Shown piece after piece: positions 1 to 9,428 of a stretch of DNA of 64,000 nucleotides. The DNA lies in contig NZ_JMCB01000017.1 in assembly GCF_000737315.1 (NCBI RefSeq), forward strand, positions 183,666 to 247,665, written 5' to 3'. Both the position numbers and the translations under genes were made by a program. Within the stretch, counting starts at the first letter, position 1; each line of letters opens with the position of its first letter. Under the pieces are notes generated by a model. It saw nothing but the letters and a program-made list of their open reading frames with translations. It was not told the DNA's origin and made no database searches. Source of the DNA: Hyalangium minutum. Its GTDB lineage: Bacteria > Myxococcota > Myxococcia > Myxococcales > Myxococcaceae.

Positions 1-2325
1 GTGCTTCTTGCCCATCTCCCGGACGGCCGTGACCTTGTCGGCCGGCATCAGCGGAGCGCGCGCCTCGTCGATGCCCACCTGAGCGGCGATCGCCTTGGCC
101 ACCCGGGCGTTGTCACCGGAGAGCATCACCGTCTGCGCGATGCCGATCTGCTTGAGGGTCTGGATGACGTGGTGCGCGCCGCTGCGAACGGTGTCCGCGA
201 CGCCAATCACCCCGAGGAACTGCCCGGCCCTGCGCACCACCATCGTGGTCTGCCCGGCCTCCTCGAGCTTCTGCACCTCCGCGTTGAGCTCCGCCGGGAA
301 CGTCTGGCCCTCGAACAGCGCCAGGTTGCCGACCTCGACGGCCTCCTCGCCGATCTTCGCGCGGATGCCCTTGCCGTGGATGGCCTCGCAGTCCTTACCC
401 GCGGGGGCCTGGACTTTGTGCTCGGTGGCGGCATCCACCACCGCGCGAGCCAGCGGGTGCGCGGAGAGAGACTCGACCGCCGCGGCGGTGCCGAGCAGCT
501 CATCGCGAGAGACACCGGCCACCGGAGCAATGGTCAGCACCTTGGGACGGCCCACCGTGAGCGTGCCCGTCTTGTCGAAAGCAATGGCCCGGATGCCGCC
601 GAGCAGCTCCAGGTAGATGCCGCCCTTGACGAGCACCCCGCCCCGGGCCGCCGCCGCGACCGCGGACAGCACCGCGGAGGGCGTGGAGATGGCCAGGGCG
701 CATGGAGACGCGGCGACGAGCAGCGACACTGCCCGCAGGATCGCCTCCTTGAACGGATAGCCGAGCACCACGAGCACCACCGGGAACACGATGGCCGCGA
801 TCATCACCAGCGGAGCGAAGGTCCGCTCCATGCGCTGAGCAAAGCGCTGGTTGGGACCCTTCTGGGCCTCGGCCTGAGCGACCATGTCCACCACGCGGGC
901 GAGCACGGACTCCGAGGACAGGTGCGTCACCTCGATCTCCAGCGCGGCCTCACTGTTGATGGTGCCAGAGAACACGTTGTCCCCCGGCTTCTTGGGCACC
1001 GGAATGGACTCACCGGTGATGGCGGCCTCTTCGAGCGAGCTCTTGCCCTCGCGGATGATGCCGTCGAGCGGGACGCGATCGCCGGGGCGCACGACGATCA
1101 TCTCGCCGCGCTGCACCTTGTCCACGGGGACCTCGACCACCTCGTTTCCACGACGGACCCGGGCCACCTCGGGACGCAGAGCGCCCAGCGCCTCGATGGA
1201 CCGGCGGGCGCGATCCATCGCGCGGTGCTCGAGCGCATGGCCAGCGCTGAAGAGGAAGAGCAGGAAGGCGCCCTCGAACCAGGCGCCGAGCACGGCCGCG
1301 CCAATGGCGGCCACGACCATCATGGTCTCGATGTCGATGCGCAGCTGAGCAATCGACTGGATGGAGCCGCGAATGGCGAAGAAACCACCGCTCGCCATGC
1401 TGAGGGCCCAGACGAGCGTCGGGACCAGGGCGGGCACGGAGGCATAGCGCTCCAGGAGCCAGCCCGCGACGAGCAGGGCGCCCGAAGCCACCACCAGCGG
1501 CAGCTCGAGCAAGGGGGCCAGACCACCACCGTGCGCGTGGTGCGAGCAGGCATGGCCTGCCATGGGCACTTCGAGCCCGTACCGGAGCGCCTTGACCTTC
1601 GCCTCGATATCCCCGAGCGAGATCTCCTCGCTGTCGTACTCGATGACAAGGCGCTCGCTGGCGTAAGCGACGCTCGCGGAGAGGACACCCTTCATGTGGC
1701 TGACGGCGTGCTCGATCACCGCCGCCGCGTCGGCCGAGTCCATGCCGCGCACGAACCACGTGAAGTGCTTGTAGCGCTTGGCGACGACTCCGCCGGTCTT
1801 CTTGGCCAGCTCGAGCAGCTGAGACGCGCTCACCAGCTCGGGCTGGTAGTGAATGCAAACCTCGGCGTAGCCGTTGTCGCGCCGAAGGTGGACATCCTGG
1901 ATGCCCTTCTGGGCCTCGAGGGCCTCCTCCAGCTTCTCGAAGCGGCCGACGTCATCCGTCTCGCCCGGCAGCGTGCCCTCCAGGTCGAGCTGGAGCGCGA
2001 CGCCTCCGCCCTCCGCAGGCCGATGCCCGGGAGGACGAATTCGCTTCGGCGGGTGGTGGTGATGACCATGGCCGTGACCATGATCGTGGTCATGGTTGCA
2101 GCTAGGACCATGAACATGCTCCTCGCCGTGGTCATGGCCGTGGTGGTCATGGCCATGGTGGTCATGGCCATGGTGGTCATGGCCGTGCGCATGACCATGG
2201 TCGTGATCATGGTCATGCTTACAGTCGGGGCCGTGCACGTGCTTCACGACAATCCCCTGGCCCGGCTTGGTGGCCGAGCCAGTGGAAAATCCCACCAGCT
2301 TCCCAAACTTCTTCGGCTCCGGCAT
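1..2325 (-). CDS. Heavy-metal-translocating P1B-type ATPase (SPC motif, P1B-4/CzcP-like), C-terminus cut off by window start
   Basis: Not in the ORF track; hand-translated from ATG at 2325: MPEPKKFGKLVGFSTGS..., His-rich tract, HMA-like domains, ITGESIPV (about 1000-1020), VAASPCALAISTP (SPC at 700-708), FDKTGTLT (about 556-579), MLSGDN near the window start. Confidence 0.93.
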   Translation of the reverse strand, partial: MPEPKKFGKLVGFSTGSATKPGQGIVVKHVHGPDCKHDHDHDHGHAHGHDHHGHDHHGHDHHGHDHGEEHVHGPSCNHDHDHGHGHGHHHHPPKRIRPPGHRPAEGGGVALQLDLEGTLPGETDDVGRFEKLEEALEAQKGIQDVHLRRDNGYAEVCIHYQPELVSASQLLELAKKTGGVVAKRYKHFTWFVRGMDSADAAAVIEHAVSHMKGVLSASVAYASERLVIEYDSEEISLGDIEAKVKALRYGLEVPMAGHACSHHAHGGGLAPLLELPLVVASGALLVAGWLLERYASVPALVPTLVWALSMASGGFFAIRGSIQSIAQLRIDIETMMVVAAIGAAVLGAWFEGAFLLFLFSAGHALEHRAMDRARRSIEALGALRPEVARVRRGNEVVEVPVDKVQRGEMIVVRPGDRVPLDGIIREGKSSLEEAAITGESIPVPKKPGDNVFSGTINSEAALEIEVTHLSSESVLARVVDMVAQAEAQKGPNQRFAQRMERTFAPLVMIAAIVFPVVLVVLGYPFKEAILRAVSLLVAASPCALAISTPSAVLSAVAAAARGGVLVKGGIYLELLGGIRAIAFDKTGTLTVGRPKVLTIAPVAGVSRDELLGTAAAVESLSAHPLARAVVDAATEHKVQAPAGKDCEAIHGKGIRAKIGEEAVEVGNLALFEGQTFPAELNAEVQKLEEAGQTTMVVRRAGQFLGVIGVADTVRSGAHHVIQTLKQIGIAQTVMLSGDNARVAKAIAAQVGIDEARAPLMPADKVTAVREMGKKH
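2053..2241 (-). repeat. His-rich low-complexity tract with 15-bp GHDHH repeats and two HVHGPxC motifs
   Basis: Translates as HVHGPDCKHDHDHDHGHAHGHDHHGHDHHGHDHHGHDHGEEHVHGPSCNHDHDHGHGHGHHHH. Confidence 0.9.
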
Positions 2326-2344
2326 GGCACTTCCTACTGGCTAG

Positions 2345-3325
2345 TTAGTGGCGATGACCGCCGTGCTTCCGAGCGGGAGGAGTCGCGGCAGCCACGGGCT
2401 CGGGCTCGTGGTGCTCCTCTTCCTCCTCGTCGTGGTGATCGTCGTCATGCTCCTCGGGGATAGGCTGGGTGAACTTCTGCCCCGCCACCTCGAGCGTGAA
2501 GGCCTTGCACTCGGCAGGCACGTCGAACTCGAGCACCGCCGGCAGGCGTCCCTCGTAGCTCTTGAGCACCTTGCCCTGCTCGTCCGTGACGGTGCCGCCA
2601 GCAGCGACGGTCATCGTCTCGTCCACGAGCACCGCCACCAGCTCGGCCATCTCCTCCATCCGATCCGCGATGCGGTGGCACCACAGGTGCCCCACTCCCG
2701 GGTACGTGACGTGGGAGACCTTCTCCATCTGCTCCTCGTCCACCTGGTCGCCCACGCCCACGAACACGAAGTTCATGCGCGGCAGGCGGCCCGCGGAGAT
2801 CTCCTTGGCCACCTGCGTGGCATAAGCCATCACGTCGTTGGGGTCGGAGATCTGCGAGTCGGTGATGATCACCGCCAGCCCGCGCTTGGCGCCCGCCCCC
2901 ACCTGCTGCTTGATGTGAGCGACGAAGTCGCGCAGCACCGGCAGCATGATGGTGGCCTTGCCGTAGAACTTCGGTCCCGGGAACCGGTAGCCCTTCGCCT
3001 GAGGTCCGGTGAGGTCACCCACCACCTCGAGCTGGGCACCGTCGCCCGTGGCCCAGTACGCCACGCGCACCGCGCCATCGCGGTCCTTGTTGGCCAGGTA
3101 CTCGAGCATCCACTGCATCTGGGGCTCGACCAGGTTCTTCACCGGCGCCAGCTTGGCGAGGATGCCGCGAGGGCCGTACTCGTCCTCCATGCTGGCCGAG
3201 CCGTCCATGTAGAGGGCCACATCGAGCCCTTCCACGGTCGGATCATGCAGCAGCGTGGCGACGACCGTGTTGCCCTTGCGGTGGACGTCGGAGAACGGTC
3301 GAACGATGACTTCGTGGCCAGCCAT
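2345..3325 (-). CDS. vWA-domain protein (TerF-type vWA-like), paralog 2, His/Glu-rich tail
   Basis: MIDAS YMDGSAS, IITD, FVGVG; tail EEHDDDHHDEEEEEHH...KHGGHRH. Confidence 0.8.
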   Translation of the reverse strand: MAGHEVIVRPFSDVHRKGNTVVATLLHDPTVEGLDVALYMDGSASMEDEYGPRGILAKLAPVKNLVEPQMQWMLEYLANKDRDGAVRVAYWATGDGAQLEVVGDLTGPQAKGYRFPGPKFYGKATIMLPVLRDFVAHIKQQVGAGAKRGLAVIITDSQISDPNDVMAYATQVAKEISAGRLPRMNFVFVGVGDQVDEEQMEKVSHVTYPGVGHLWCHRIADRMEEMAELVAVLVDETMTVAAGGTVTDEQGKVLKSYEGRLPAVLEFDVPAECKAFTLEVAGQKFTQPIPEEHDDDHHDEEEEEHHEPEPVAAATPPARKHGGHRH

Positions 3326-4266
3326 CAGTGGTGATCCTCGTCTTCGTCCTCGTCGTGGTGCTCTTCATCCGGCAGCGGCTGGGTGTAGCGCTGGCCGTTG
3401 ACCTCGAGCGTGAAGCTCTTGGCGCCCTCGGGCACGTCGAACTCGAGCACCGCGGGCAGGCGGCCCTCGTAGCTCTTCAGCACCTTGCCCTTGTCGTCGT
3501 AGATGGTGCCGCCCGCGGCCACCGTCATGTTCTCGTCCACGAGCACCGCGACCAGCTCGGCGACCTGGTTGATCTCCTTGGCGATGCGGTGGCACCACAG
3601 GTGGCCCACGCCCTTGTACTCGGTGTGGGCGATCTCCTCGAGCTGGTGCTCGTCCACGTCGTCACCGACGCCCACGAGCACGAAGTTGAGCCGAGGCAGG
3701 CGGCCGGCGGCGATCTCCTTGGCCACCTCGGCCGAGAAGATCTGCACTTCGTCCGCGTCGCTCAGGCGGCCATCCGTGACGACGACGGCGCAGCCGCGCT
3801 TGGCGCCTTCGGGGACCTGGGCCTTGAGGTAGCTCACGTAGTCCTTGAGCGCCGGCGTGAGGCACGTGTTGTTGCCGAGCTTCTTGGCGCCGGGGAACTT
3901 GTACTGCTTGACGTCCAAGCCCTTCAGCTCGCCGATCACCTCGATGTCCTTGCCGGTGGCGCCGCAGGCCCAGTAGGCCACGCGCAGCAAGCCGTTGCGA
4001 TCCTTGGTGGCCAGGTACTCGAGCATCCACTGCACCTGGGGCTCCACCTGGTTCGACGCCTCCTTCAGAGGCGCGCTGCGGAGCCACTCCAGAAAGCTGC
4101 GGGTGGGGCGCTTGTACTCGTACTCCTCGCGCATGCTGCCCGAAGCGTCCATGTAGATGGCCATGTCGAGGCCTTCCACGGTCGGATCGTGCAGGAGCAC
4201 CGCGCGGACCCGATCCCCCTCACGATGGAGATCCGAAAACGGCTCTACCGGCTTCTCGTGTCCCAT
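3325..4266 (-). CDS. vWA-domain protein (TerF-type vWA-like), paralog 1, His/Asp-rich tail
   Basis: MIDAS YMDASGS, VVTDG, LVGVG; tail DEEHHDEDEDEDHH; stop overlaps next start (TGATG at 3323-3327). Confidence 0.8.
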   Translation of the reverse strand: MGHEKPVEPFSDLHREGDRVRAVLLHDPTVEGLDMAIYMDASGSMREEYEYKRPTRSFLEWLRSAPLKEASNQVEPQVQWMLEYLATKDRNGLLRVAYWACGATGKDIEVIGELKGLDVKQYKFPGAKKLGNNTCLTPALKDYVSYLKAQVPEGAKRGCAVVVTDGRLSDADEVQIFSAEVAKEIAAGRLPRLNFVLVGVGDDVDEHQLEEIAHTEYKGVGHLWCHRIAKEINQVAELVAVLVDENMTVAAGGTIYDDKGKVLKSYEGRLPAVLEFDVPEGAKSFTLEVNGQRYTQPLPDEEHHDEDEDEDHH

Positions 4267-4329
4267 TGTTCCCCTTTCAGAAGTGGGCGAGACGGTAGCG
4301 CCCTCCAGCGGGGATCCGCAATGGGAGGC

Positions 4330-5685
4330 TCAGCTATCGAAGTCCTTCATCCAGTCCGGTTTTTGTTGCGGCTCCGGCTCAGGGGCCTTGGCCTTCTTCT
4401 CGCGCGGAGGAGCCTTCTTGGGCGCAGAGGCCGTGGGAGCGGCCGGAGCAGCGGGGGCCGAGCCAAAGTCAGCGAGCCACTCCGGCGGCTGGTTGGACTT
4501 CTTGGGAGGAAGCGCGGGGATATTGGGGCGCGACCGGGAGATCTTCGCCTTCTTCGTGCCACCCGGTGGCGTATGCGCGTCCAGGAAGTCCTTCATCCAG
4601 TCATTGGGCCGCGCGGGAGCCGGAGGCGGACGCGGCGGGATGGATTTCTGGACCACGGGCGTGGACGTGAGCGGGAGACTGGGGACGATGCCTGTCCGCA
4701 CCGGCGCGCTGTTGCCGGGACGGATCAGCGCACGGAGCGCGCTCTCCGCGTCATTGGGCCACCCGGGCAGGACTCCGAGGGCGCGGCGCGCCAGCTCGAC
4801 GAACTCGGCGGCCGTGGCCTCTTGAGGAACCTTCACCTTCTCTGCGGAGAGCAGGCCTGCCAGCTTCCCCACCAGCCCTCCGCGAGGCTTGCGCAGGATG
4901 GCCACGTCGCCATTCACCTCATAGCCGCGCGTCTCCAGATCCGCGATGGCCTGGATGCGGCTGGGCACGGGCAGCTCCATCAGCCGAAGCAGCTCCGGCC
5001 CCGAGTGCTCGCGGGCATTCTCCTGCAGCTGGGTGAGCACCGCGTAGAGGATGTCCGCCACGAGCCGATCATTGGCGGCGCTGCGCGTCTGCAGTTCCTC
5101 GGGCACGGCGGGATAAGCCAGGACCAGCCCGCGGCCCTCGGCGATGACCTCGGGGCGATCTCCCGGGAGCAACCCGTGGTAGCTGCGCTGCAGCGTCTTG
5201 ATCTCGGCGTCCGGGGCGTAGATGAAGGCATCCGCCGCGCCGTGCACCAGCCCCGCGAGCACCGCTCCACGGCTCACGGTGAGCTGGCCCGGGACGCGTT
5301 TCAGCTCCTCGCCCGGCCACGGGCCGATCAGGTTCCCATAGAGGTACACGGGATCATTCGCGCCCTCGGCCTCCTCCGGATGCTCGACGAGTTCCACCGT
5401 GAAGAAGAAAAGCTCGTGAGCGGCGATGCGGCGGGGCGAGCGGCCCGAGGTCACCTCATGGTGCGCGAGCTGGGCCTGGGCGCTGGCGGGCAACTGGGCG
5501 CGATCTCGGCCCGGCACAGCGAGGAGCTGACCCACCGCGTCGAGCCCGATGATCCACTCCTGCTCGCCGAGGTAGCGGACCTCCAGGCGGAACGTGTCCA
5601 CCACATTGACCAGGGCGGAGGCGTCCGGCCGGACGGGCTCGGCCGGAGTGGCTGCGTGTGGGACGAAGTAGCGGGGATGGCTCAC
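4330..5685 (-). CDS. Hypothetical protein with Pro-rich tail carrying three W-x-x-D-F motifs
   Basis: Long ORF co-oriented with the vWA genes; likely GTG start at 5685 (MSHPRYF...), track start TTG 5709; tail motifs PNDWMKDF, PPEWLADF, KPDWMKDF. Confidence 0.7.
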   Translation of the reverse strand: MSHPRYFVPHAATPAEPVRPDASALVNVVDTFRLEVRYLGEQEWIIGLDAVGQLLAVPGRDRAQLPASAQAQLAHHEVTSGRSPRRIAAHELFFFTVELVEHPEEAEGANDPVYLYGNLIGPWPGEELKRVPGQLTVSRGAVLAGLVHGAADAFIYAPDAEIKTLQRSYHGLLPGDRPEVIAEGRGLVLAYPAVPEELQTRSAANDRLVADILYAVLTQLQENAREHSGPELLRLMELPVPSRIQAIADLETRGYEVNGDVAILRKPRGGLVGKLAGLLSAEKVKVPQEATAAEFVELARRALGVLPGWPNDAESALRALIRPGNSAPVRTGIVPSLPLTSTPVVQKSIPPRPPPAPARPNDWMKDFLDAHTPPGGTKKAKISRSRPNIPALPPKKSNQPPEWLADFGSAPAAPAAPTASAPKKAPPREKKAKAPEPEPQQKPDWMKDFDS

Positions 5686-5740
5686 GGAGGAGCACCAAGG
5701 CTCGCCCAACCTGGACGGGAGCGCAAGCAGGCGCCCAGGA

Positions 5741-6448
5741 CTACGGAGCCGCCAGCGCCTTCAACAGCCCCTTGGCTCGGCGGGTGGAGCGGAGCATGAC
5801 GAGCTTCGCATCCGCCGAGTGCGGCGGCAGCGGCACCCACGACATGTACTGAATCTCCTGGCCCTCGCGCTTCCGCACGCCGCTCACGTACTGCGTGCCT
5901 CCCGTGTAGATGTCGATCCACGGCATGCACTCGTTGAGGTTGGCGTGCTTCGCGGTCTCGTCCTTCAGCTCCGTCACCGCCATGCAGGGGAACTCGGAGC
6001 AGTCCATGGAGACGAGCTCCATGGCGCCCATGGGGCACTCCTTCAGCGCGCGCTCGAGGTTCTTCTTGAAGCCCTCGGGGGTGTACGGCTCGGTGATGCC
6101 GGCCGGGAACGGGAGCGGCTGGAACTGATCCGCGCCGGGCTTGCTCGCACGGAAGGCGGGCGGCGGAGGTGGAGCGGGCGGCGGAGGCGGCGTGTCCTGC
6201 GGCGGCGTGCGCACCTCCAGCGGCTGGGAGAGCTCGGCGAGCTTGCGCTCCATCTCTCGCAGTTGTTCCGGGTTCACCGCCGGTGAGATCGGCGGCAGCG
6301 GAAGAGGCTGGGTGTGCGAGCTGAGGGCGAGCGCCGGAGGGAGGACGACCTGCGGCTTGCTGGTGAACGACAGGACGACCCGGAGCCCCGACACGATGAC
6401 GAAGAGCACCAGGAAGAGGGAGCCGCGCTTCTTGAGAGGGTTCTGCAC
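5741..6448 (-). CDS. Hypothetical single-pass membrane protein
   Basis: N-terminal hydrophobic segment, Pro-rich linker, Cys-containing C-terminal domain (ECP...DCSEFPC...EC). Confidence 0.65.
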   Translation of the reverse strand: MQNPLKKRGSLFLVLFVIVSGLRVVLSFTSKPQVVLPPALALSSHTQPLPLPPISPAVNPEQLREMERKLAELSQPLEVRTPPQDTPPPPPAPPPPPAFRASKPGADQFQPLPFPAGITEPYTPEGFKKNLERALKECPMGAMELVSMDCSEFPCMAVTELKDETAKHANLNECMPWIDIYTGGTQYVSGVRKREGQEIQYMSWVPLPPHSADAKLVMLRSTRRAKGLLKALAAP

Positions 6449-6573: not shown

Positions 6574-7365
6574 ATGACTGCGCTCAAGAGAAACAACGTC
6601 CGGGTTTTGGGAAATGGGAAGCAACCCATCGTCTTCGCTCACGGCTACGGCTGTGATCAGGCCATGTGGCGCTTCATCACGCCCGCGTTCCGCGAGAACT
6701 ACCAGCTGATCCTCTTCGACCACGTGGGCGCGGGCCAGTCGGACCTCTCGGCCTACAGCCGCAGCAAGTACGGCAGCCTGCGAGGCTACGCGGAGGACGT
6801 GCTGGAGATCTGCCGCGAGCTGGACCTGAAGGACACCCTCTTCGTCGGGCACTCTGTGAGCAGCATGATCGGGGTGCTGGCCGGCATTGCCGAGCCGGCC
6901 CGATTCTCGAAGCTGGTCCTGATCGGCCCCTCGCCCTGCTACATCAACGATGGCGACTACGTAGGTGGGTTCAACCGGCCTGACATCGAGGGACTGCTGG
7001 AGTCGCTCGAGAGCAACTACCTGGGCTGGTCCAGCTCCATGGCGCCCGCCATCATGGGCAACCCGGATCGCCCGGAGCTGGGGGCGGAGCTCACCAACAG
7101 CTTCTGCCGCACCAACCCGGAGATCGCCAAGCACTTCGCCCGCGTCACCTTCCTGTCCGACAACCGGAATGATCTGCCGAAGCTGAAGGTCCCCTCGCTG
7201 ATCCTCCAGTGCAGCGACGACCTGATCGCTCCCGAAGCCGTGGGGCGCTACCTGCACCAACATCTGGGGGACAGTGAGCTCCGGGTGCTGAAAGCCACCG
7301 GGCACTGTCCCCATCTCAGCGCTCCAGAGGAGACGATCGAGGCCATGCGAGCCTATCTCTCCTGA
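6574..7365 (+). CDS. rsbQ: RsbQ/KAI2-D14-like alpha/beta hydrolase
   Basis: NNVRVLGNG, FAHGYGCDQAMW, GHSVS nucleophile, IGPSPCYIND, GHCPHLSAP. Confidence 0.9.
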   Translation: MTALKRNNVRVLGNGKQPIVFAHGYGCDQAMWRFITPAFRENYQLILFDHVGAGQSDLSAYSRSKYGSLRGYAEDVLEICRELDLKDTLFVGHSVSSMIGVLAGIAEPARFSKLVLIGPSPCYINDGDYVGGFNRPDIEGLLESLESNYLGWSSSMAPAIMGNPDRPELGAELTNSFCRTNPEIAKHFARVTFLSDNRNDLPKLKVPSLILQCSDDLIAPEAVGRYLHQHLGDSELRVLKATGHCPHLSAPEETIEAMRAYLS

Positions 7366-7382: not shown

Positions 7383-9428
7383 TTGGCATCGCGCATCCCC
7401 TGGCCTCAAGGCCCCCCTGGGACAGCCCCCGAGGAGAGCGCCGAGGAGCTCTATGAGCAGGCACCCTGCGGCTACTTCTCCACGCTGCCCAACGGGATGC
7501 TCATCCGGGTCAACCAGACCTTCCTGGAGTGGACGGGCTACGAGCGGGACGAGCTGCTGGAGGGCAGGCGGTTCCAGGACCTGCTGACCGTCGGGGGGAA
7601 GATCTTCCACGAGACGCACTACGCGCCCCTGCTGCAGCTGCAGGGGCGCGTCCGGGAGATCAACTTCGAGCTGCTATGCAAGCACGGCGGCTCGCTGCCC
7701 GTGCTGATCAACACCGTGCAGAAGAAGGACGCCACGGGCAGGGTGGTGCTCCACCGCACCACCGCCTTCAGCATCACCGAGCGGAAGAACTACGAGCGGG
7801 AGCTGCTGCTGGCCCGGAAGCGGGCCGAGCAGGCCGAGCAAGTCGCCCGGGCCCGGACGGACTTCCTGTCCATCATCAGCCACGAGATCCGCACGCCGAT
7901 GAACGCCATCGTCGGGATCTCAGGACTGCTGCGGCAGACCCACCTGTCTCCGGAGCAGGAGAAGTACGTGGGCATCCTCCAGACCTCGTCGGAGAACCTG
8001 CTGGACCTGCTCGACAACATCCTGGACATCAGCAAGCTCGAGGGCGGCAAGCGGGTGTTGGAGGAGCGGCGCTTCAATGTCCGCCAGCTGCTCCACGGCA
8101 TCTTCTACGGCCTCACCGCCAAGGCCGAGGAGAAGAAGCTGGCCGTGCACGTGGTGGTGGATGAGGGGGTGCCGGGGTGGCTGCTAGGAGAGCCCGTCAA
8201 GCTCAGCCAGGTGCTCACCCACCTGCTGGCCAATGCCATCAAGTTCACCGATCGCGGAACCGTGACGCTCGCGGCGCACGTGCGGGAGTCCTCGCCGGAG
8301 TCCGTCTGCATCGACTTCCGGGTCACCGACACGGGCATCGGCATTCCCAAGCCCCTCCAGGCCACGGTCTTCGAGGAGCTCTCGCAGCCCAGCGACGAAG
8401 CCCCCCAGCGGTATGGCAGCGGCCTGAGCCTGGCCATCTGCCAGAAGCTGCTGGGCCTGTATGGCCGCACGCTGCGCCTGGAGAGTGTGCCGGGAGAGGG
8501 CTCCTCGTTCTTCTTCGATCTGACCCTGAAGGTGGCCGCGGATTCCGAGCCACCCGAGGTTCACGTCGCGAGGAACACGGCCACTTCCCAGGGCCTACGG
8601 GACATGCACCTGCTGGTGGCCGAGGACAACTCCGTCAATGTCTTCGTGCTCTCACAGTACCTGCGCAAGTGGGGTGCCCGATTCGACGTGGTGGAGAACG
8701 GGCACGAAGCCGTCGCGAAGATCCAGGAGGCGCATTACGACCTGGTGTTGATGGATCTGCAGATGCCGGAGCTGGACGGCTATGACGCCACCCGCGCCAT
8801 TCGGGCCCTGCCCGAGGAACAGTTCCGAAAGCTGCCCATCCTCGCCATGACGGCCTCGACGCGGGTCGGGCTGGAGGAGCGGCTCACCGCGGCGGGCTTC
8901 ACGGACTTCGTCTGCAAGCCCTTCAGGCCGGAGGAGCTCTTCTCGAAGATCTCCCAGCGCGGTGCCTCCTCGCTCTCGGCTCCCGAGGATTCTCGCACGG
9001 CGGACCTCCCCATCCAGGAAGGCGCAGAGGTGGAACCTTCCCCCGCCCGGCCCCGCTTCAGCTTGGACGAGTTCCGGCGCATGGCCGAGGGGGACGACGA
9101 GGCGCTGAGAGAGTTCATCACCATCACCCTCACCAGCGCCGAGCAGCACAAGCACGCCTTCCAGCAGGCGCTCGAGGCAGGCAACCTGGAGGCGTTCGAC
9201 TTCCAGGCCCATAAGATCAAGATGACCGTGGCGCTGCTTCAGGCGCATGTCCTTCAGGACGCGCTGCAGCAGGGACGAGCGCTCCTCGCCCAGCAAGAGC
9301 GCGCCCCCGCTCTGCTCCAGGCCTCGGTTCGCGCCATCCACACGGAGCTGAATGCCATCATCGCGGCCCTGCGCGAGGACCTGCGGCAGACCGCCGCGAG
9401 CGTGGAGGCGGGGACAAGCGAGGGCTGA
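7383..9428 (+). CDS. Hybrid sensor kinase PAS-HisKA-HATPase-REC-Hpt
   Basis: RsbP-type PAS (APCGYFST...FHETHYAPLL), H-box SHEIRTPM, NAIKFT, DTGIGI, REC LVAEDN...LMDLQMP...CKP, Hpt AHKIK. Start (TTG) uncertain. Confidence 0.9.
   Translation: MASRIPWPQGPPGTAPEESAEELYEQAPCGYFSTLPNGMLIRVNQTFLEWTGYERDELLEGRRFQDLLTVGGKIFHETHYAPLLQLQGRVREINFELLCKHGGSLPVLINTVQKKDATGRVVLHRTTAFSITERKNYERELLLARKRAEQAEQVARARTDFLSIISHEIRTPMNAIVGISGLLRQTHLSPEQEKYVGILQTSSENLLDLLDNILDISKLEGGKRVLEERRFNVRQLLHGIFYGLTAKAEEKKLAVHVVVDEGVPGWLLGEPVKLSQVLTHLLANAIKFTDRGTVTLAAHVRESSPESVCIDFRVTDTGIGIPKPLQATVFEELSQPSDEAPQRYGSGLSLAICQKLLGLYGRTLRLESVPGEGSSFFFDLTLKVAADSEPPEVHVARNTATSQGLRDMHLLVAEDNSVNVFVLSQYLRKWGARFDVVENGHEAVAKIQEAHYDLVLMDLQMPELDGYDATRAIRALPEEQFRKLPILAMTASTRVGLEERLTAAGFTDFVCKPFRPEELFSKISQRGASSLSAPEDSRTADLPIQEGAEVEPSPARPRFSLDEFRRMAEGDDEALREFITITLTSAEQHKHAFQQALEAGNLEAFDFQAHKIKMTVALLQAHVLQDALQQGRALLAQQERAPALLQASVRAIHTELNAIIAALREDLRQTAASVEAGTSEG

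What the first reader, a model, noticed from the sequence alone, without database searches (positions are those of the whole stretch)
1..6448. Candidate undescribed metal-stress operon: membrane protein, motif-tail protein, two vWA paralogs, His-rich P1B ATPase
Seen: five co-oriented minus-strand genes with short gaps (about 55, 63, -1 and 19 nt); the last three each carry His-rich extensions. Established: SPC-type P1B ATPases export Co/Zn/Cd/Fe; vWA MIDAS sites bind divalent cations; TerF/TerY-type vWA proteins occur in Ter stress-response neighbourhoods. Inference: a dedicated module in which soluble vWA proteins sense, buffer or deliver metal to the pump. I know of no described system of this architecture.
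Basis: partly seen in the sequence, partly recalled or inferred. Interest (0 to 1): 0.75.

Follow-up and report, generated by a model that had tools for sequence, protein, structure and literature searches.

The report
Conserved vWA-pair / P1B-4 metal-pump cassette
A metal-exporting pump is always found next to three uncharacterised soluble proteins, in soil bacteria of at least four phyla, so these are probably the first partner proteins known for this class of pump; what they do is untested.

Summary
Five co-oriented minus-strand genes lie at 1-6448, with gaps of 55, 63, -1 and 19 nt. The last three carry acidic/His-rich extensions.

The functional unit is four genes, not five:
- an unknown-fold protein with three invariant W-[MLIV]-x-D-F tail motifs ("tail459");
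- two vWA paralogues, 62% identical, with intact MIDAS sites;
- a P1B-4 ATPase with SPC in M4, HEGST in M6 in orthologues, and sCoaT as best solved-structure match.

This order and strand are kept in Myxococcota, Acidobacteriota, Obscuribacterales and Vulcanimicrobiota. Starting from the vWA gene, the ATPase follows in 62 of 67 loci. Starting from the pump's N-terminal module, a vWA gene sits directly upstream in 44 of 46 informative loci. No other gene is conserved across phyla, and the membrane protein is lineage-specific.

The vWA proteins are not TerF/TerY or Copine members by profile score. Tail459 has no family or fold match. No paper describes the cassette.

The best reading is inferred, not shown: a cytosolic accessory complex docks on the pump's conserved N-terminal module and regulates or loads it. 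The closest analogues are copine BON1 with the ACA8 Ca-ATPase and PacL with Ctp pumps.

"Metal-stress operon" is unproven: no conserved metal regulator or riboswitch was found. I rate it a new variant of a known kind, of moderately high interest.

The parts
1..2325 (-). P1B-4 heavy-metal P-type ATPase, N-terminal 775 aa. The C-terminal part, about 115-155 aa including M5/M6, lies beyond the window edge.
   Evidence: Pfam E1-E2_ATPase 2e-50, Hydrolase 3e-26, HMA 5e-11. TIGR01525 above its cutoff. SPC at residues 540-542 and DKTGT at 584-588. Best solved-structure sequence match is sCoaT 7qbz at 2e-124, against ZntA 4umv at 5e-97. Orthologues carry AASPCAL in 60 of 60 and HEGST in 58 of 60.
2053..2241 (-). 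His/Asp-rich N-terminal stretch of the pump (residues 29-91: 30 His, 10 Asp, 2 Cys in 63 residues). It includes a 15-nt tandem repeat at 2128-2184.
   Evidence: Its length and composition vary widely between orthologues, from roughly 40-60 to over 250 residues, and it is Cys-rich outside Myxococcaceae.
1507..2022 (-). Conserved 172-aa N-terminal module of the pump (residues 102-273). It comprises an HMA-like domain without CxxC, a second HMA domain (GMDSADAA in place of CxxC), and the invariant motif GH-x-C-x2-H-x4-GLAP just before helix MA.
   Evidence: Alignment A3 has no indels across phyla and 37 invariant columns. Pfam HMA covers residues 191-249. A metagenome scan seeded with this module returns the same cassette.
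2345..3325 (-). vWA2 (326 aa): cytosolic vWA domain plus a C-terminal beta domain. Its tail runs acidic/His, then a P/A linker, then KHGGHRH at the C-terminus.
   Evidence: 62% identical to vWA1. DGSAS at residue 41 and GHLWCH at residue 212. Orthologues are 70-80% identical in other phyla, and the tail type is conserved. Its start overlaps the vWA1 stop by 1 nt.
3325..4266 (-). vWA1 (313 aa): cytosolic vWA domain with MIDAS residues D40, S42, S44, T134 and D165, a C-terminal beta domain, and a tail ending (D/E)n-DHH at the C-terminus.
   Evidence: AF2 model with pLDDT 78. Foldseek matches ITIH1, integrin beta, BON1 copine, TRAP and vWF-A3 at probability 1.0. MIDAS residues are invariant in alignment A1. 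Pfam VWA scores only 18.6 bits against a cutoff of 23.8. The family has only 282 representatives among 1.84 billion proteins.
4330..5685 (-). tail459: a cytosolic protein of unknown fold (folded domain at about residues 10-330) followed by a disordered P/A/K-rich tail. The start is probably GTG 5685; the alternative is TTG 5709.
   Evidence: No Pfam, NCBIfam or PADLOC hit. In the AF2 model, most of residues 10-330 has pLDDT above 90. No Foldseek PDB match (best E 0.23) and no profile match to PDB sequences. It sits upstream of vWA1 in 64 of 68 loci.
4585..4599 (-). Tail motif 1, WMKDF (residues 371-375).
   Evidence: W, D and F are invariant in 22 sequences from several phyla (alignment A2). 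Predicted as a short helix within the disordered tail.
4465..4479 (-). Tail motif 2, WLADF (residues 411-415).
4339..4353 (-). Tail motif 3, WMKDF (residues 453-457), two residues from the C-terminus.
   Evidence: It lies at the extreme C-terminus in all aligned homologues.
5741..6448 (-). mem235: a neighbouring gene with an N-terminal hydrophobic anchor, a Pro-rich linker and a Cys-containing C-terminal domain. It may be co-transcribed here but is NOT part of the conserved cassette.
   Evidence: GC3 of 0.92 shows it is a real gene. No family hits. It is detected only in L001 and L085 among 138 related loci.

Best explanation
The unit is a four-gene cassette, tail459 -> vWA1 -> vWA2 -> P1B-4 ATPase. 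It encodes a divalent transition-metal exporter (Co/Zn/Cd/Ni/Fe class) together with a dedicated cytosolic accessory complex.

Proposed mechanism, with shown and inferred steps separated:
1. Shown: the pump has the P1B-4 transport-site motifs. It also has an unusually long N-terminus, made of a variable His/Asp(/Cys) metal-binding stretch and a strictly conserved 172-aa double-HMA-like module.
2. Shown: the two vWA paralogues are ancient. Each is closer to its orthologues in other phyla (66-80% identical) than to its partner (62%). Both keep complete MIDAS sites and characteristic C-terminal tails, (D/E)n-DHH and HGGHRH.
3. Inferred: vWA1 and vWA2 form a hetero-oligomer.
4. Inferred: tail459 recruits or bridges them through its three W-x-x-D-F helices, with the invariant Asp as a candidate MIDAS ligand.
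5. Inferred: the complex docks on the pump's N-terminal module. It either relieves autoinhibition in a cation-dependent way or hands metal from the His/acidic tails to the pump's entry site (GHxCxxH motif).

Functionally this would resemble copine BON1 activating the ACA8 Ca2+-ATPase through its N-terminal regulatory domain. It would also resemble PacL proteins, which bind the metal-binding domain of mycobacterial Ctp pumps.
For: Linkage:
- Order and strand are conserved in 62 of 67 loci (ATPase), 72 of 77 (vWA2) and 64 of 68 (tail459) when starting from vWA1 in species-representative genomes. These span Myxococcota, Acidobacteriota, Obscuribacterales and Vulcanimicrobiota.
- In 44 of 46 informative metagenome loci seeded from the pump's N-terminal module, a vWA gene lies directly upstream.
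- No other gene is conserved across phyla, so the cassette is self-contained.
- Gaps are short and a 1-nt start/stop overlap joins vWA1 and vWA2.

Pump class: SPC, HEGST and the sCoaT best match. The indel-free N-terminal module is conserved in all cassette pumps examined.

vWA proteins: vWA fold at Foldseek probability 1.0, with BON1 copine giving the best rmsd (5.5-5.7 A) and the highest TMq (0.45). MIDAS residues are invariant. Tail types are conserved across phyla.

tail459: three invariant motifs, each predicted as a helix in a disordered tail.

Precedents:
- The BON1 vWA cation site is required to activate ACA8, and BON1 binds the pump's N-terminus (PMC12167975).
- PacL proteins are encoded upstream of P1B pumps and bind the pump's metal-binding domain. 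PacL1 carries a C-terminal DLHDHDH motif (PMC13460109).
- The sCoaT paper states that no chaperones are known for P1B-4 pumps (10.1101/2021.09.01.458532).
Against: - There is no experimental or expression evidence of any kind, and no interaction prediction could be run.
- MIDAS sites usually hold Mg2+ or Mn2+ and mediate protein contacts rather than sense transition metals.
- The vWA proteins are more conserved between phyla (66-80%) than the pump (48-62%) or tail459 (27-39%). That is unusual for a simple accessory chaperone and may point to a more constrained role.
- Exceptions exist. Two pumps with the N-terminal module lack an upstream vWA gene (L120, L133). L050 has tail459 and vWA1 without vWA2 or a pump. 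Some genomes hold a lone third vWA paralogue elsewhere.
- No conserved metal-responsive regulator or riboswitch accompanies the cassette.
- No M. xanthus protein appeared among the listed homologues, so the model organism may lack the cassette; this was not checked directly.
Confidence: 0.45

Rival explanations
1. Scaffold or stabiliser only, as with PacL. The vWA/tail459 complex is needed for folding, stability, membrane clustering or localisation of the pump. It neither senses nor transfers metal, and the His/acidic tails are dispensable or only fine-tune the system.
For: PacL1/2 are strictly required for CtpC/CtpG accumulation, whereas the PacL1 His motif is not required for basal resistance (PMC13460109). 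vWA domains are classic protein-protein adhesion modules, as the Foldseek partners show. tail459 has three repeated short linear motifs in a disordered tail, which is typical of a multivalent scaffold.
Against: The terminal His pairs (DHH and HRH at the C-terminus) are conserved across phyla. So are the His/Cys residues inside the vWA domain (H14, H26, H214, H222, C225, H226). This argues that metal ligands are under selection. None of the accessory proteins has a membrane anchor.
Confidence: 0.2
2. Metallation or supply rather than detoxification. The pump exports a specific metal (for example Co2+, Fe2+ or Ni2+) to load periplasmic or secreted metalloproteins, or to balance a metal quota constitutively. 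The vWA/tail459 complex selects and channels that metal. The cassette would then be housekeeping, not a stress operon.
For: No metal-responsive regulator or riboswitch is conserved with the cassette. It is chromosomal and never found on plasmids in PLSDB. Sequence conservation is very high, which fits a core function. From my own knowledge, some P1B pumps are proposed to serve metalloprotein loading; this was not checked here.
Against: The distribution is patchy: only some lineages within a few phyla carry it, and no M. xanthus protein was among the listed homologues. That fits an accessory, horizontally spread trait better than housekeeping. The His-rich N-termini expand through recent tandem repeats, as expected for adaptive metal buffering.
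Confidence: 0.15
3. The vWA/tail459 proteins belong to a non-metal signalling or conflict-type system in which the P-type ATPase is the effector or membrane anchor. The MIDAS ligand would be a protein or small molecule unrelated to the transported metal.
For: Distant members of the same vWA family are fused to TIR, STAND-type AAA, TPR or OmpA domains. These architectures are typical of conflict or signalling systems. Weak PF10138 (TerF-like) similarity appears in those distant relatives. The host lineages are mostly large-genome soil bacteria.
Against: The cassette proteins have none of these fusions. PADLOC gives no hit. There are no Ter, kinase, phosphatase or NTPase genes conserved nearby. 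All three soluble-protein and pump termini are His/acidic and so have metal-type chemistry.
Confidence: 0.1
4. Linkage without direct cooperation. The genes travel together as a horizontally transferred block but act independently.
For: The patchy phyletic distribution with high inter-phylum identity suggests horizontal spread as a block.
Against: Order, strand and tight spacing are preserved while all flanking genes differ. Linkage holds from both sides at about 93-96%. The vWA1/vWA2 stop and start codons overlap. Such persistence over this divergence (tail459 down to 27% identity) is not expected without functional coupling.
Confidence: 0.05

Closest known systems
P1B-4 ATPases (sCoaT of Sulfitobacter, CzcP, CtpD/CtpJ, PfeT; plant HMA1)
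   Same: SPC in M4, HEGxT in M6, DKTGT, and MA/MB-type N-terminal helices. sCoaT (7qbz) is the best solved-structure sequence match. From my own knowledge, plant HMA1 also has a His-rich N-terminus.
   Different: Characterised bacterial members, including sCoaT, lack a classical metal-binding domain and have no known partner proteins. This clade has a long His/Asp(/Cys) stretch, a conserved 172-aa double-HMA-like module with CxxC lost or reduced, and three dedicated upstream genes.
PacL1-3 with CtpC/G/V 'effluxosomes' of Mycobacterium tuberculosis
   Same: Accessory proteins are encoded immediately upstream of a P1B pump. They have a disordered region and a C-terminal His/Asp motif (DLHDHDH in PacL1), and they bind the pump's N-terminal metal-binding domain (PMC13460109).
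   Different: PacL proteins are small single-pass membrane proteins (DUF1490) with Glu/Ala repeats. Here the partners are soluble: two roughly 320-aa vWA proteins and a roughly 450-aa protein of unknown fold. There is no sequence or fold relation, the pump subclass differs, and the phyla differ.
Copine BON1 with ACA8/ACA10 (plant P2B Ca2+-ATPase) regulation
   Same: [quoted passage not shown] The BON1 vWA domain is the structural hit with the best rmsd for vWA1. vWA2 gives a weak Pfam Copine hit.
   Different: There are no C2 domains. The system is prokaryotic, the pump is P1B rather than P2B, and the metal is a transition metal rather than Ca2+. Two paralogues and a third protein are involved. 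The Copine profile score is below its threshold.
CopZ/Atx1-type metallochaperones with CopA (P1B-1)
   Same: A soluble cytosolic protein is co-encoded with a P1B pump and interacts with the pump's N-terminal metal-binding domains or entry platform.
   Different: CopZ is a roughly 70-aa ferredoxin-fold protein with CxxC that handles Cu(I). The proteins here are vWA or unknown fold with His/carboxylate chemistry.
TerY / TerF-type vWA proteins of ter stress clusters
   Same: Cytosolic bacterial vWA proteins with a MIDAS site. Distant relatives of this family give weak PF10138 hits.
   Different: The window proteins give no PF10138 hit. No TerD/TerZ/TerC, kinase or phosphatase neighbours are present.

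Membership tests
P1B-4 heavy-metal P-type ATPase | P-type catalytic core with the DKTGT phosphorylation motif. | tested here: met
   FDKTGTLT at residues 583-590. Pfam E1-E2_ATPase and Hydrolase hits. TIGR01525 scores 450.7 bits against a cutoff of 346.
P1B-4 heavy-metal P-type ATPase | SPC motif in M4. | tested here: met
   AASPCAL at residues 538-544 in the window, and in 60 of 60 orthologues.
P1B-4 heavy-metal P-type ATPase | HEGxT motif in M6. | tested here: inconclusive
   M6 lies beyond the window edge. HEGST is present in 58 of 60 full-length orthologues, including ones 80-82% identical to the window protein.
P1B-4 heavy-metal P-type ATPase | Closer to a solved P1B-4 pump than to P1B-1 or P1B-2 pumps. 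| tested here: met
   sCoaT 7qbz at 2e-124, ZntA 4umv at 5e-97, CopA at 3e-78.
P1B-4 heavy-metal P-type ATPase | Transports Co2+, Zn2+, Cd2+, Ni2+ or Fe2+ out of the cytosol. | not testable with these tools
   Needs transport or ATPase assays and mutant phenotypes.
vWA (von Willebrand A) domain with MIDAS | Rossmann-like vWA fold. | tested here: met
   AF2 model with pLDDT 78. There are 41 PDB matches at E<=1e-3; those listed are vWA-domain proteins or complexes at probability 0.97-1.0.
vWA (von Willebrand A) domain with MIDAS | DxSxS...T...D metal-ion-dependent adhesion site. | tested here: met
   D40, S42, S44, T134 and D165 are invariant in both paralogues across phyla. The spacing matches integrin I domains (own knowledge).
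vWA (von Willebrand A) domain with MIDAS | Pfam PF00092 or PF13519 score above the gathering threshold. | tested here: not met
   vWA1 scores 18.6 bits against 23.8. vWA2 gives no VWA hit. This is a divergent subfamily of 282 representatives.
TerF/TerY-type vWA (PF10138) / Ter stress system | Match to the vWA-TerF-like profile. | tested here: not met
   No hit at E<=0.1 for either paralogue. Only sub-threshold hits (20.8-23.7 bits against 29.4) appear in distant multidomain relatives.
TerF/TerY-type vWA (PF10138) / Ter stress system | Neighbourhood with TerD/TerZ/TerC, or with the TerY-associated kinase and phosphatase. | tested here: not met
   Across phyla the only conserved neighbours are tail459 and the ATPase.
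Copine | Two N-terminal C2 domains followed by a copine-type A domain. | tested here: not met
   No C2 domains. Pfam Copine scores 15.9 bits against 27, for vWA2 only. The structural similarity to the BON1 A domain is a resemblance, not membership.
PacL (DUF1490) P-ATPase-associated chaperone-like proteins | A single transmembrane segment, Glu/Ala repeats and the DUF1490 domain. | tested here: not met
   No Pfam hit. No hydrophobic segment was seen on reading the vWA1, vWA2 or tail459 sequences; no transmembrane predictor was run.
CopZ/Atx1-like metallochaperone | A free-standing ferredoxin-fold protein of about 70 aa with CxxC. | tested here: not met
   None of the three soluble proteins has an HMA hit. 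HMA-type domains occur only inside the pump, and there CxxC is replaced (SADA or SAQC).

The most novel reading that the evidence does not exclude
vWA1, vWA2 and tail459 form a new class of cytosolic partner complex for P1B-4 pumps, the first known for this subclass. A MIDAS-bearing vWA heteromer would read cytosolic divalent metal and switch the pump on through its N-terminal double-HMA-like module. tail459 would be a new-fold scaffold whose three W-x-x-D-F helices are MIDAS ligands. This would be a prokaryotic counterpart of copine regulation of Ca2+-ATPases, and would suggest that vWA control of P-type pumps is an ancient principle.
Probability: 0.3. Interest if true: 0.8.

Novelty: new variant of a known kind. 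Interest (0 to 1): 0.62.

Why it matters
P1B-4 pumps have the broadest metal range of the heavy-metal ATPases and matter in pathogens and plants. No chaperone or regulator is known for them, and the role of their N-termini is openly debated.

This cassette is near-obligately linked and spans several phyla. It offers three concrete candidate partners and a defined docking module, so that question becomes directly testable.

It also adds two uncharacterised protein families. One is a vWA subfamily that is 66-80% identical across phyla. The other is a confidently modelled domain with no structural match, joined to a clean triple short-linear-motif tail. If the analogy with copine and ACA8 holds, it would link bacterial and eukaryotic ways of controlling P-type pumps.

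Tried and rejected
The ATPase is confirmed. The vWA proteins do not hit PF10138, so TerF/TerY membership is rejected.
- **Defence-system reading.** PADLOC gives no hits.
- **Sequence matches to solved structures.** None for vWA1 as a single sequence or as a profile, and none for the tail459 profile.
- **Fold match for tail459.** None (best E 0.23), despite a confident model.
- **Riboswitch or other RNA element.** Only spurious miRNA-model hits on the His-codon repeat. A batch scan of eight loci exceeded the size limit and was not repeated.
- **Promoter and terminator scan.** Uninformative in this GC-rich DNA. There is no terminator in the intergenic gaps.
- **Plasmid carriage.** No tblastn hit in PLSDB.
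- **Extra conserved neighbours such as a regulator, AAA+ partner or Ter genes.** All-against-all ORF clustering of 80 loci found only antisense shadow ORFs beyond the four genes.
- **Membrane protein as a module member.** Rejected.
- **Literature.** Searches by architecture, by product names and by locus tags found no description. The CorE2 Cd/Zn regulon of M. xanthus concerns other genes.
- **Domain fusions in distant vWA relatives.** OmpA, TIR, STAND and TPR fusions were found but say nothing specific about the cassette.

Full report
**1. What is in the sequence**

The region has about 63-70% GC. On the minus strand it holds five ORFs with GC3 of 0.84-0.93.
- mem235 lies at 5741-6448.
- tail459 lies at 4330-5709. 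Homologues begin at the GTG at 5685.
- vWA1 lies at 3325-4266 and vWA2 at 2345-3325.
- A P-type ATPase begins at 2325 and runs off the window edge, with 775 aa visible.

The gaps are 55, 63, -1 and 19 nt, exactly as reported. The vWA1 stop and vWA2 start overlap (TGATG). Shine-Dalgarno-like sequences precede vWA1 and the ATPase. No terminator-like site lies in the gaps.

The long plus-strand ORFs listed over the same DNA (1-2463, 3328-5799) overlap the minus-strand genes on the antisense strand. Matching antisense ORFs recur over the same genes in related loci. I therefore treat them as GC-rich shadow ORFs.

**2. The pump**

Pfam and NCBIfam place it in the heavy-metal P1B ATPases. It has DKTGT, and SPC in M4. 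Its best solved-structure sequence match is the P1B-4 pump sCoaT (7qbz, 2e-124), ahead of ZntA (5e-97).

M6 is outside the window. Of 60 full-length orthologues from related loci, 58 carry HEGST and all 60 carry AASPCAL. These are the two motifs said to form the P1B-4 high-affinity site.

The N-terminus is unusual for this subclass.
- Residues 29-91 hold 30 His and 10 Asp in 63 residues. Part of this stretch is encoded by a 15-nt tandem repeat.
- In other lineages the stretch ranges from roughly 40-60 to over 250 residues and is Cys-rich.
- A 172-residue module follows, with no indels across phyla and 37 invariant columns. It consists of an HMA-like domain without CxxC, a Pfam-detectable HMA domain whose CxxC is SADA (Myxococcaceae) or SAQC/SSTC (elsewhere), and an invariant GH-x-C-x2-H-x4-GLAP motif just before the first membrane helix.

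**3. The vWA pair**

The two proteins are 62% identical. Profile searches barely see them: VWA scores 18.6 bits against a cutoff of 23.8, Copine scores 15.9 against 27, and there is no PF10138, NCBIfam or PADLOC hit.

An AF2 model (pLDDT 78) is a vWA fold. Its Foldseek matches include ITIH1, integrin beta subunits, the copine BON1, TRAP and vWF-A3, all at probability 1.0. BON1 gives the lowest rmsd and the highest query TM-score.

N-terminal strands (residues 10-24) and a C-terminal beta domain (250-297) flank the vWA core. Several top Foldseek matches (ITIH1, integrin beta) align over 315-373 columns, longer than a vWA domain alone. I infer, from my own knowledge of those proteins, that the flanking strands may form a hybrid-domain-like unit with the vWA domain inserted, as in integrin beta.

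All five MIDAS residues (D40, S42, S44, T134, D165) are invariant in both paralogues across phyla. So are several His and Cys residues (H14, H26, H214, H222, C225, H226).

The family is small and sharply bounded. It has 282 representatives at E<=1e-3 among 1.84 billion cluster representatives.

The tails are conserved in kind.
- vWA1 ends in an acidic run closed by DHH at the C-terminus.
- vWA2 has an acidic/His run, a Pro/Ala linker and a basic HGGHRH-type C-terminus.

Neither protein has a signal peptide or hydrophobic segment on inspection of the sequences. I take them to be cytosolic; no transmembrane or signal-peptide predictor was run.

**4. tail459**

It gives no family hit in any library. 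It has 258 homologues, every one named "hypothetical" where a name exists.

The AF2 model is confident over most of residues 10-330 (pLDDT above 90). It has no structural match in the PDB (best E 0.23) and no profile match to PDB sequences.

The last 130 residues are disordered. They contain three W-[MLIV]-x-D-F motifs, with W, D and F invariant in 22 sequences from several phyla. Each motif is predicted as a short helix, and the last lies at the extreme C-terminus.

**5. Is the association real?**

A scan of one genome per species seeded with the vWA family returned 80 loci. They come from Myxococcota (Myxococcaceae, Archangiaceae, Polyangiales, Sandaracinaceae), Acidobacteriota (Blastocatellia), Obscuribacterales/Melainabacteria and Vulcanimicrobiota, plus some unclassified MAGs.

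Wherever the contig leaves room, the order tail459 -> vWA1 -> vWA2 -> ATPase on one strand holds:
- vWA2 in 72 of 77 loci;
- the ATPase in 62 of 67;
- tail459 in 64 of 68.

The exceptions are the same five loci.
- Three (L058, L069, L077) are lone vWA1-like copies in MAGs that also carry the vWA pair or the full cassette on another contig. In L058 and L077 the copy lies next to an EF-G-like gene.
- L054 is a similar lone copy next to an EF-G-like gene. No second locus from that genome was recovered.
- L050 has tail459 and vWA1 only.

I then ran the reverse test. A metagenome scan seeded with the pump's 172-aa N-terminal module returned 58 loci. Of the 46 with informative upstream sequence, 44 have a vWA gene directly upstream. 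The two exceptions are L120, with a LuxR-type gene upstream, and L133, with an unrelated 402-aa protein upstream.

All-against-all clustering of the ORFs in the 80 genome loci found no other gene conserved across phyla. mem235 is detectable only in L001 and L085.

Each vWA paralogue is closer to its orthologues in other phyla than to its partner in the same genome. vWA1 orthologues are 66-76% identical, vWA2 orthologues 70-80%, and the two partners 62%. The duplication therefore predates the spread of the cassette.

Between phyla the pump is 48-62% identical and tail459 is 27-39% identical. No copy is on a PLSDB plasmid. There is no Rfam element upstream.

**6. Mechanism**

What is shown: a self-contained, tightly spaced four-gene cassette. 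It joins a P1B-4 exporter bearing a specialised N-terminal module to three soluble proteins. Their conserved features are a pair of intact MIDAS sites, conserved His/carboxylate termini, and a triple Asp-containing helical motif.

What I infer:
- vWA1 and vWA2 form a hetero-oligomer.
- tail459 binds them multivalently through the W-x-x-D-F helices. In known MIDAS complexes an acidic ligand residue completes the metal's coordination (my own knowledge of integrin, CMG2 and Mdn1).
- The complex docks on the pump's N-terminal module to activate it or load it with metal.

Two experimentally studied systems make this plausible.
- BON1's vWA cation site is required to activate the ACA8 Ca2+-ATPase, and BON1 binds that pump's N-terminal autoinhibitory domain (PMC12167975).
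- PacL proteins are encoded upstream of mycobacterial P1B pumps and bind the pump's metal-binding domain. PacL1 carries a C-terminal DLHDHDH motif that matters at high zinc (PMC13460109).

The transported metal cannot be called from sequence beyond the P1B-4 range (Co, Zn, Cd, Ni, Fe).

I put functional coupling of the four genes at about 0.9. I put the specific regulator/loader model at about 0.45. The main rivals are a pure stabiliser or scaffold, a supply or metallation role rather than detoxification, and a non-metal signalling role.

**7. Comparison with known systems and novelty**

The pump is a member of P1B-4. The one defining motif that lies outside the window is verified in orthologues.

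The accessory proteins are vWA-fold proteins. By the tests run they are not members of the TerF/TerY, Copine, PacL or CopZ families.

No paper in the searchable library describes the cassette or names its genes. The sCoaT structure paper states that no Zn/Cd chaperones are known for P1B-4 pumps and that the role of their N-termini is open.

No M. xanthus protein appears among the 120 listed homologues, although other Myxococcus species do. The model species may therefore lack the cassette, which could help explain the silence in the literature; I did not check this directly.

I classify the finding as a new variant of a known kind: a P1B pump with dedicated cytosolic partner proteins, where the partners are of new types.

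**8. Limits**

Everything about function is inferred from sequence, synteny and predicted structure. No complex prediction, expression data or phenotype was available. The ATPase is truncated by the window edge. The start codon of tail459 is assigned by homology.

Noticed in passing
window 6574-7365 (+) and 7383-9428 (+): An RsbQ/KAI2/D14-family alpha/beta hydrolase (6e-101 to B. subtilis RsbQ, 1wom) lies divergent from mem235. A PAS-HisKA-HATPase-REC hybrid kinase follows it after 17 nt. This looks like an RsbQ-type hydrolase paired with a PAS signalling protein, as in RsbQ-RsbP.
   Followed up: partly
window 2128-2184 (-), within the ATPase His-rich coding stretch: A 15-nt tandem repeat (3.8 copies, 97% matches) encodes HGHDH units. 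It suggests recent slippage-type expansion of the pump's His-rich N-terminus, whose length varies greatly between lineages. It also causes spurious miRNA-model hits in Rfam.
   Followed up: partly
vWA1 residues 79-85 (window about 4012-4032) versus tail459 motifs at 4585-4599, 4465-4479 and 4339-4353: The nearly invariant vWA helix Q-W-M-L-E-Y-L has the same pattern (W-M-x-[DE]-[FY]-L) as tail459 motif 1 (D-W-M-K-D-F-L). This could be chance or mimicry of an interface helix.
   Followed up: no
L054, L058, L069, L077 (about 10001-10930 in L054/L058; 5615-6637 in L069; 3011-4063 in L077): A lone third vWA paralogue (about 68-70% identical to vWA1, N-terminus MSKHERPTGIFSDIH). In L058, L069 and L077 the same MAG also carries the vWA pair or the full cassette on another contig (L068, L072, L063). 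In L054, L058 and L077 the lone copy lies next to an EF-G-like gene.
   Followed up: partly
L133 1-1975 and L120 1-1000: Two metagenome pumps carry the cassette-type N-terminal module without an upstream vWA gene. In L133 the upstream gene encodes an unrelated 402-aa protein that itself ends in an acidic/His tail (EEEHEEGHVSDPSRH). In L120 a LuxR-type gene lies upstream.
   Followed up: partly
P0221, P0162, P0154/P0161/P0178 (distant vWA-family representatives): Distant relatives of this vWA family are fused to TIR, to STAND-type AAA plus a second vWA domain, or to OmpA domains. Two give sub-threshold PF10138 hits.
   Followed up: no
window 1-2463 (+) and 3328-5799 (+): Very long antisense ORFs (820 and 823 aa) overlie the real minus-strand genes. 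Matching antisense ORFs recur over the same genes in related loci, so I treat them as GC-rich shadow ORFs, not genes.
   Followed up: yes
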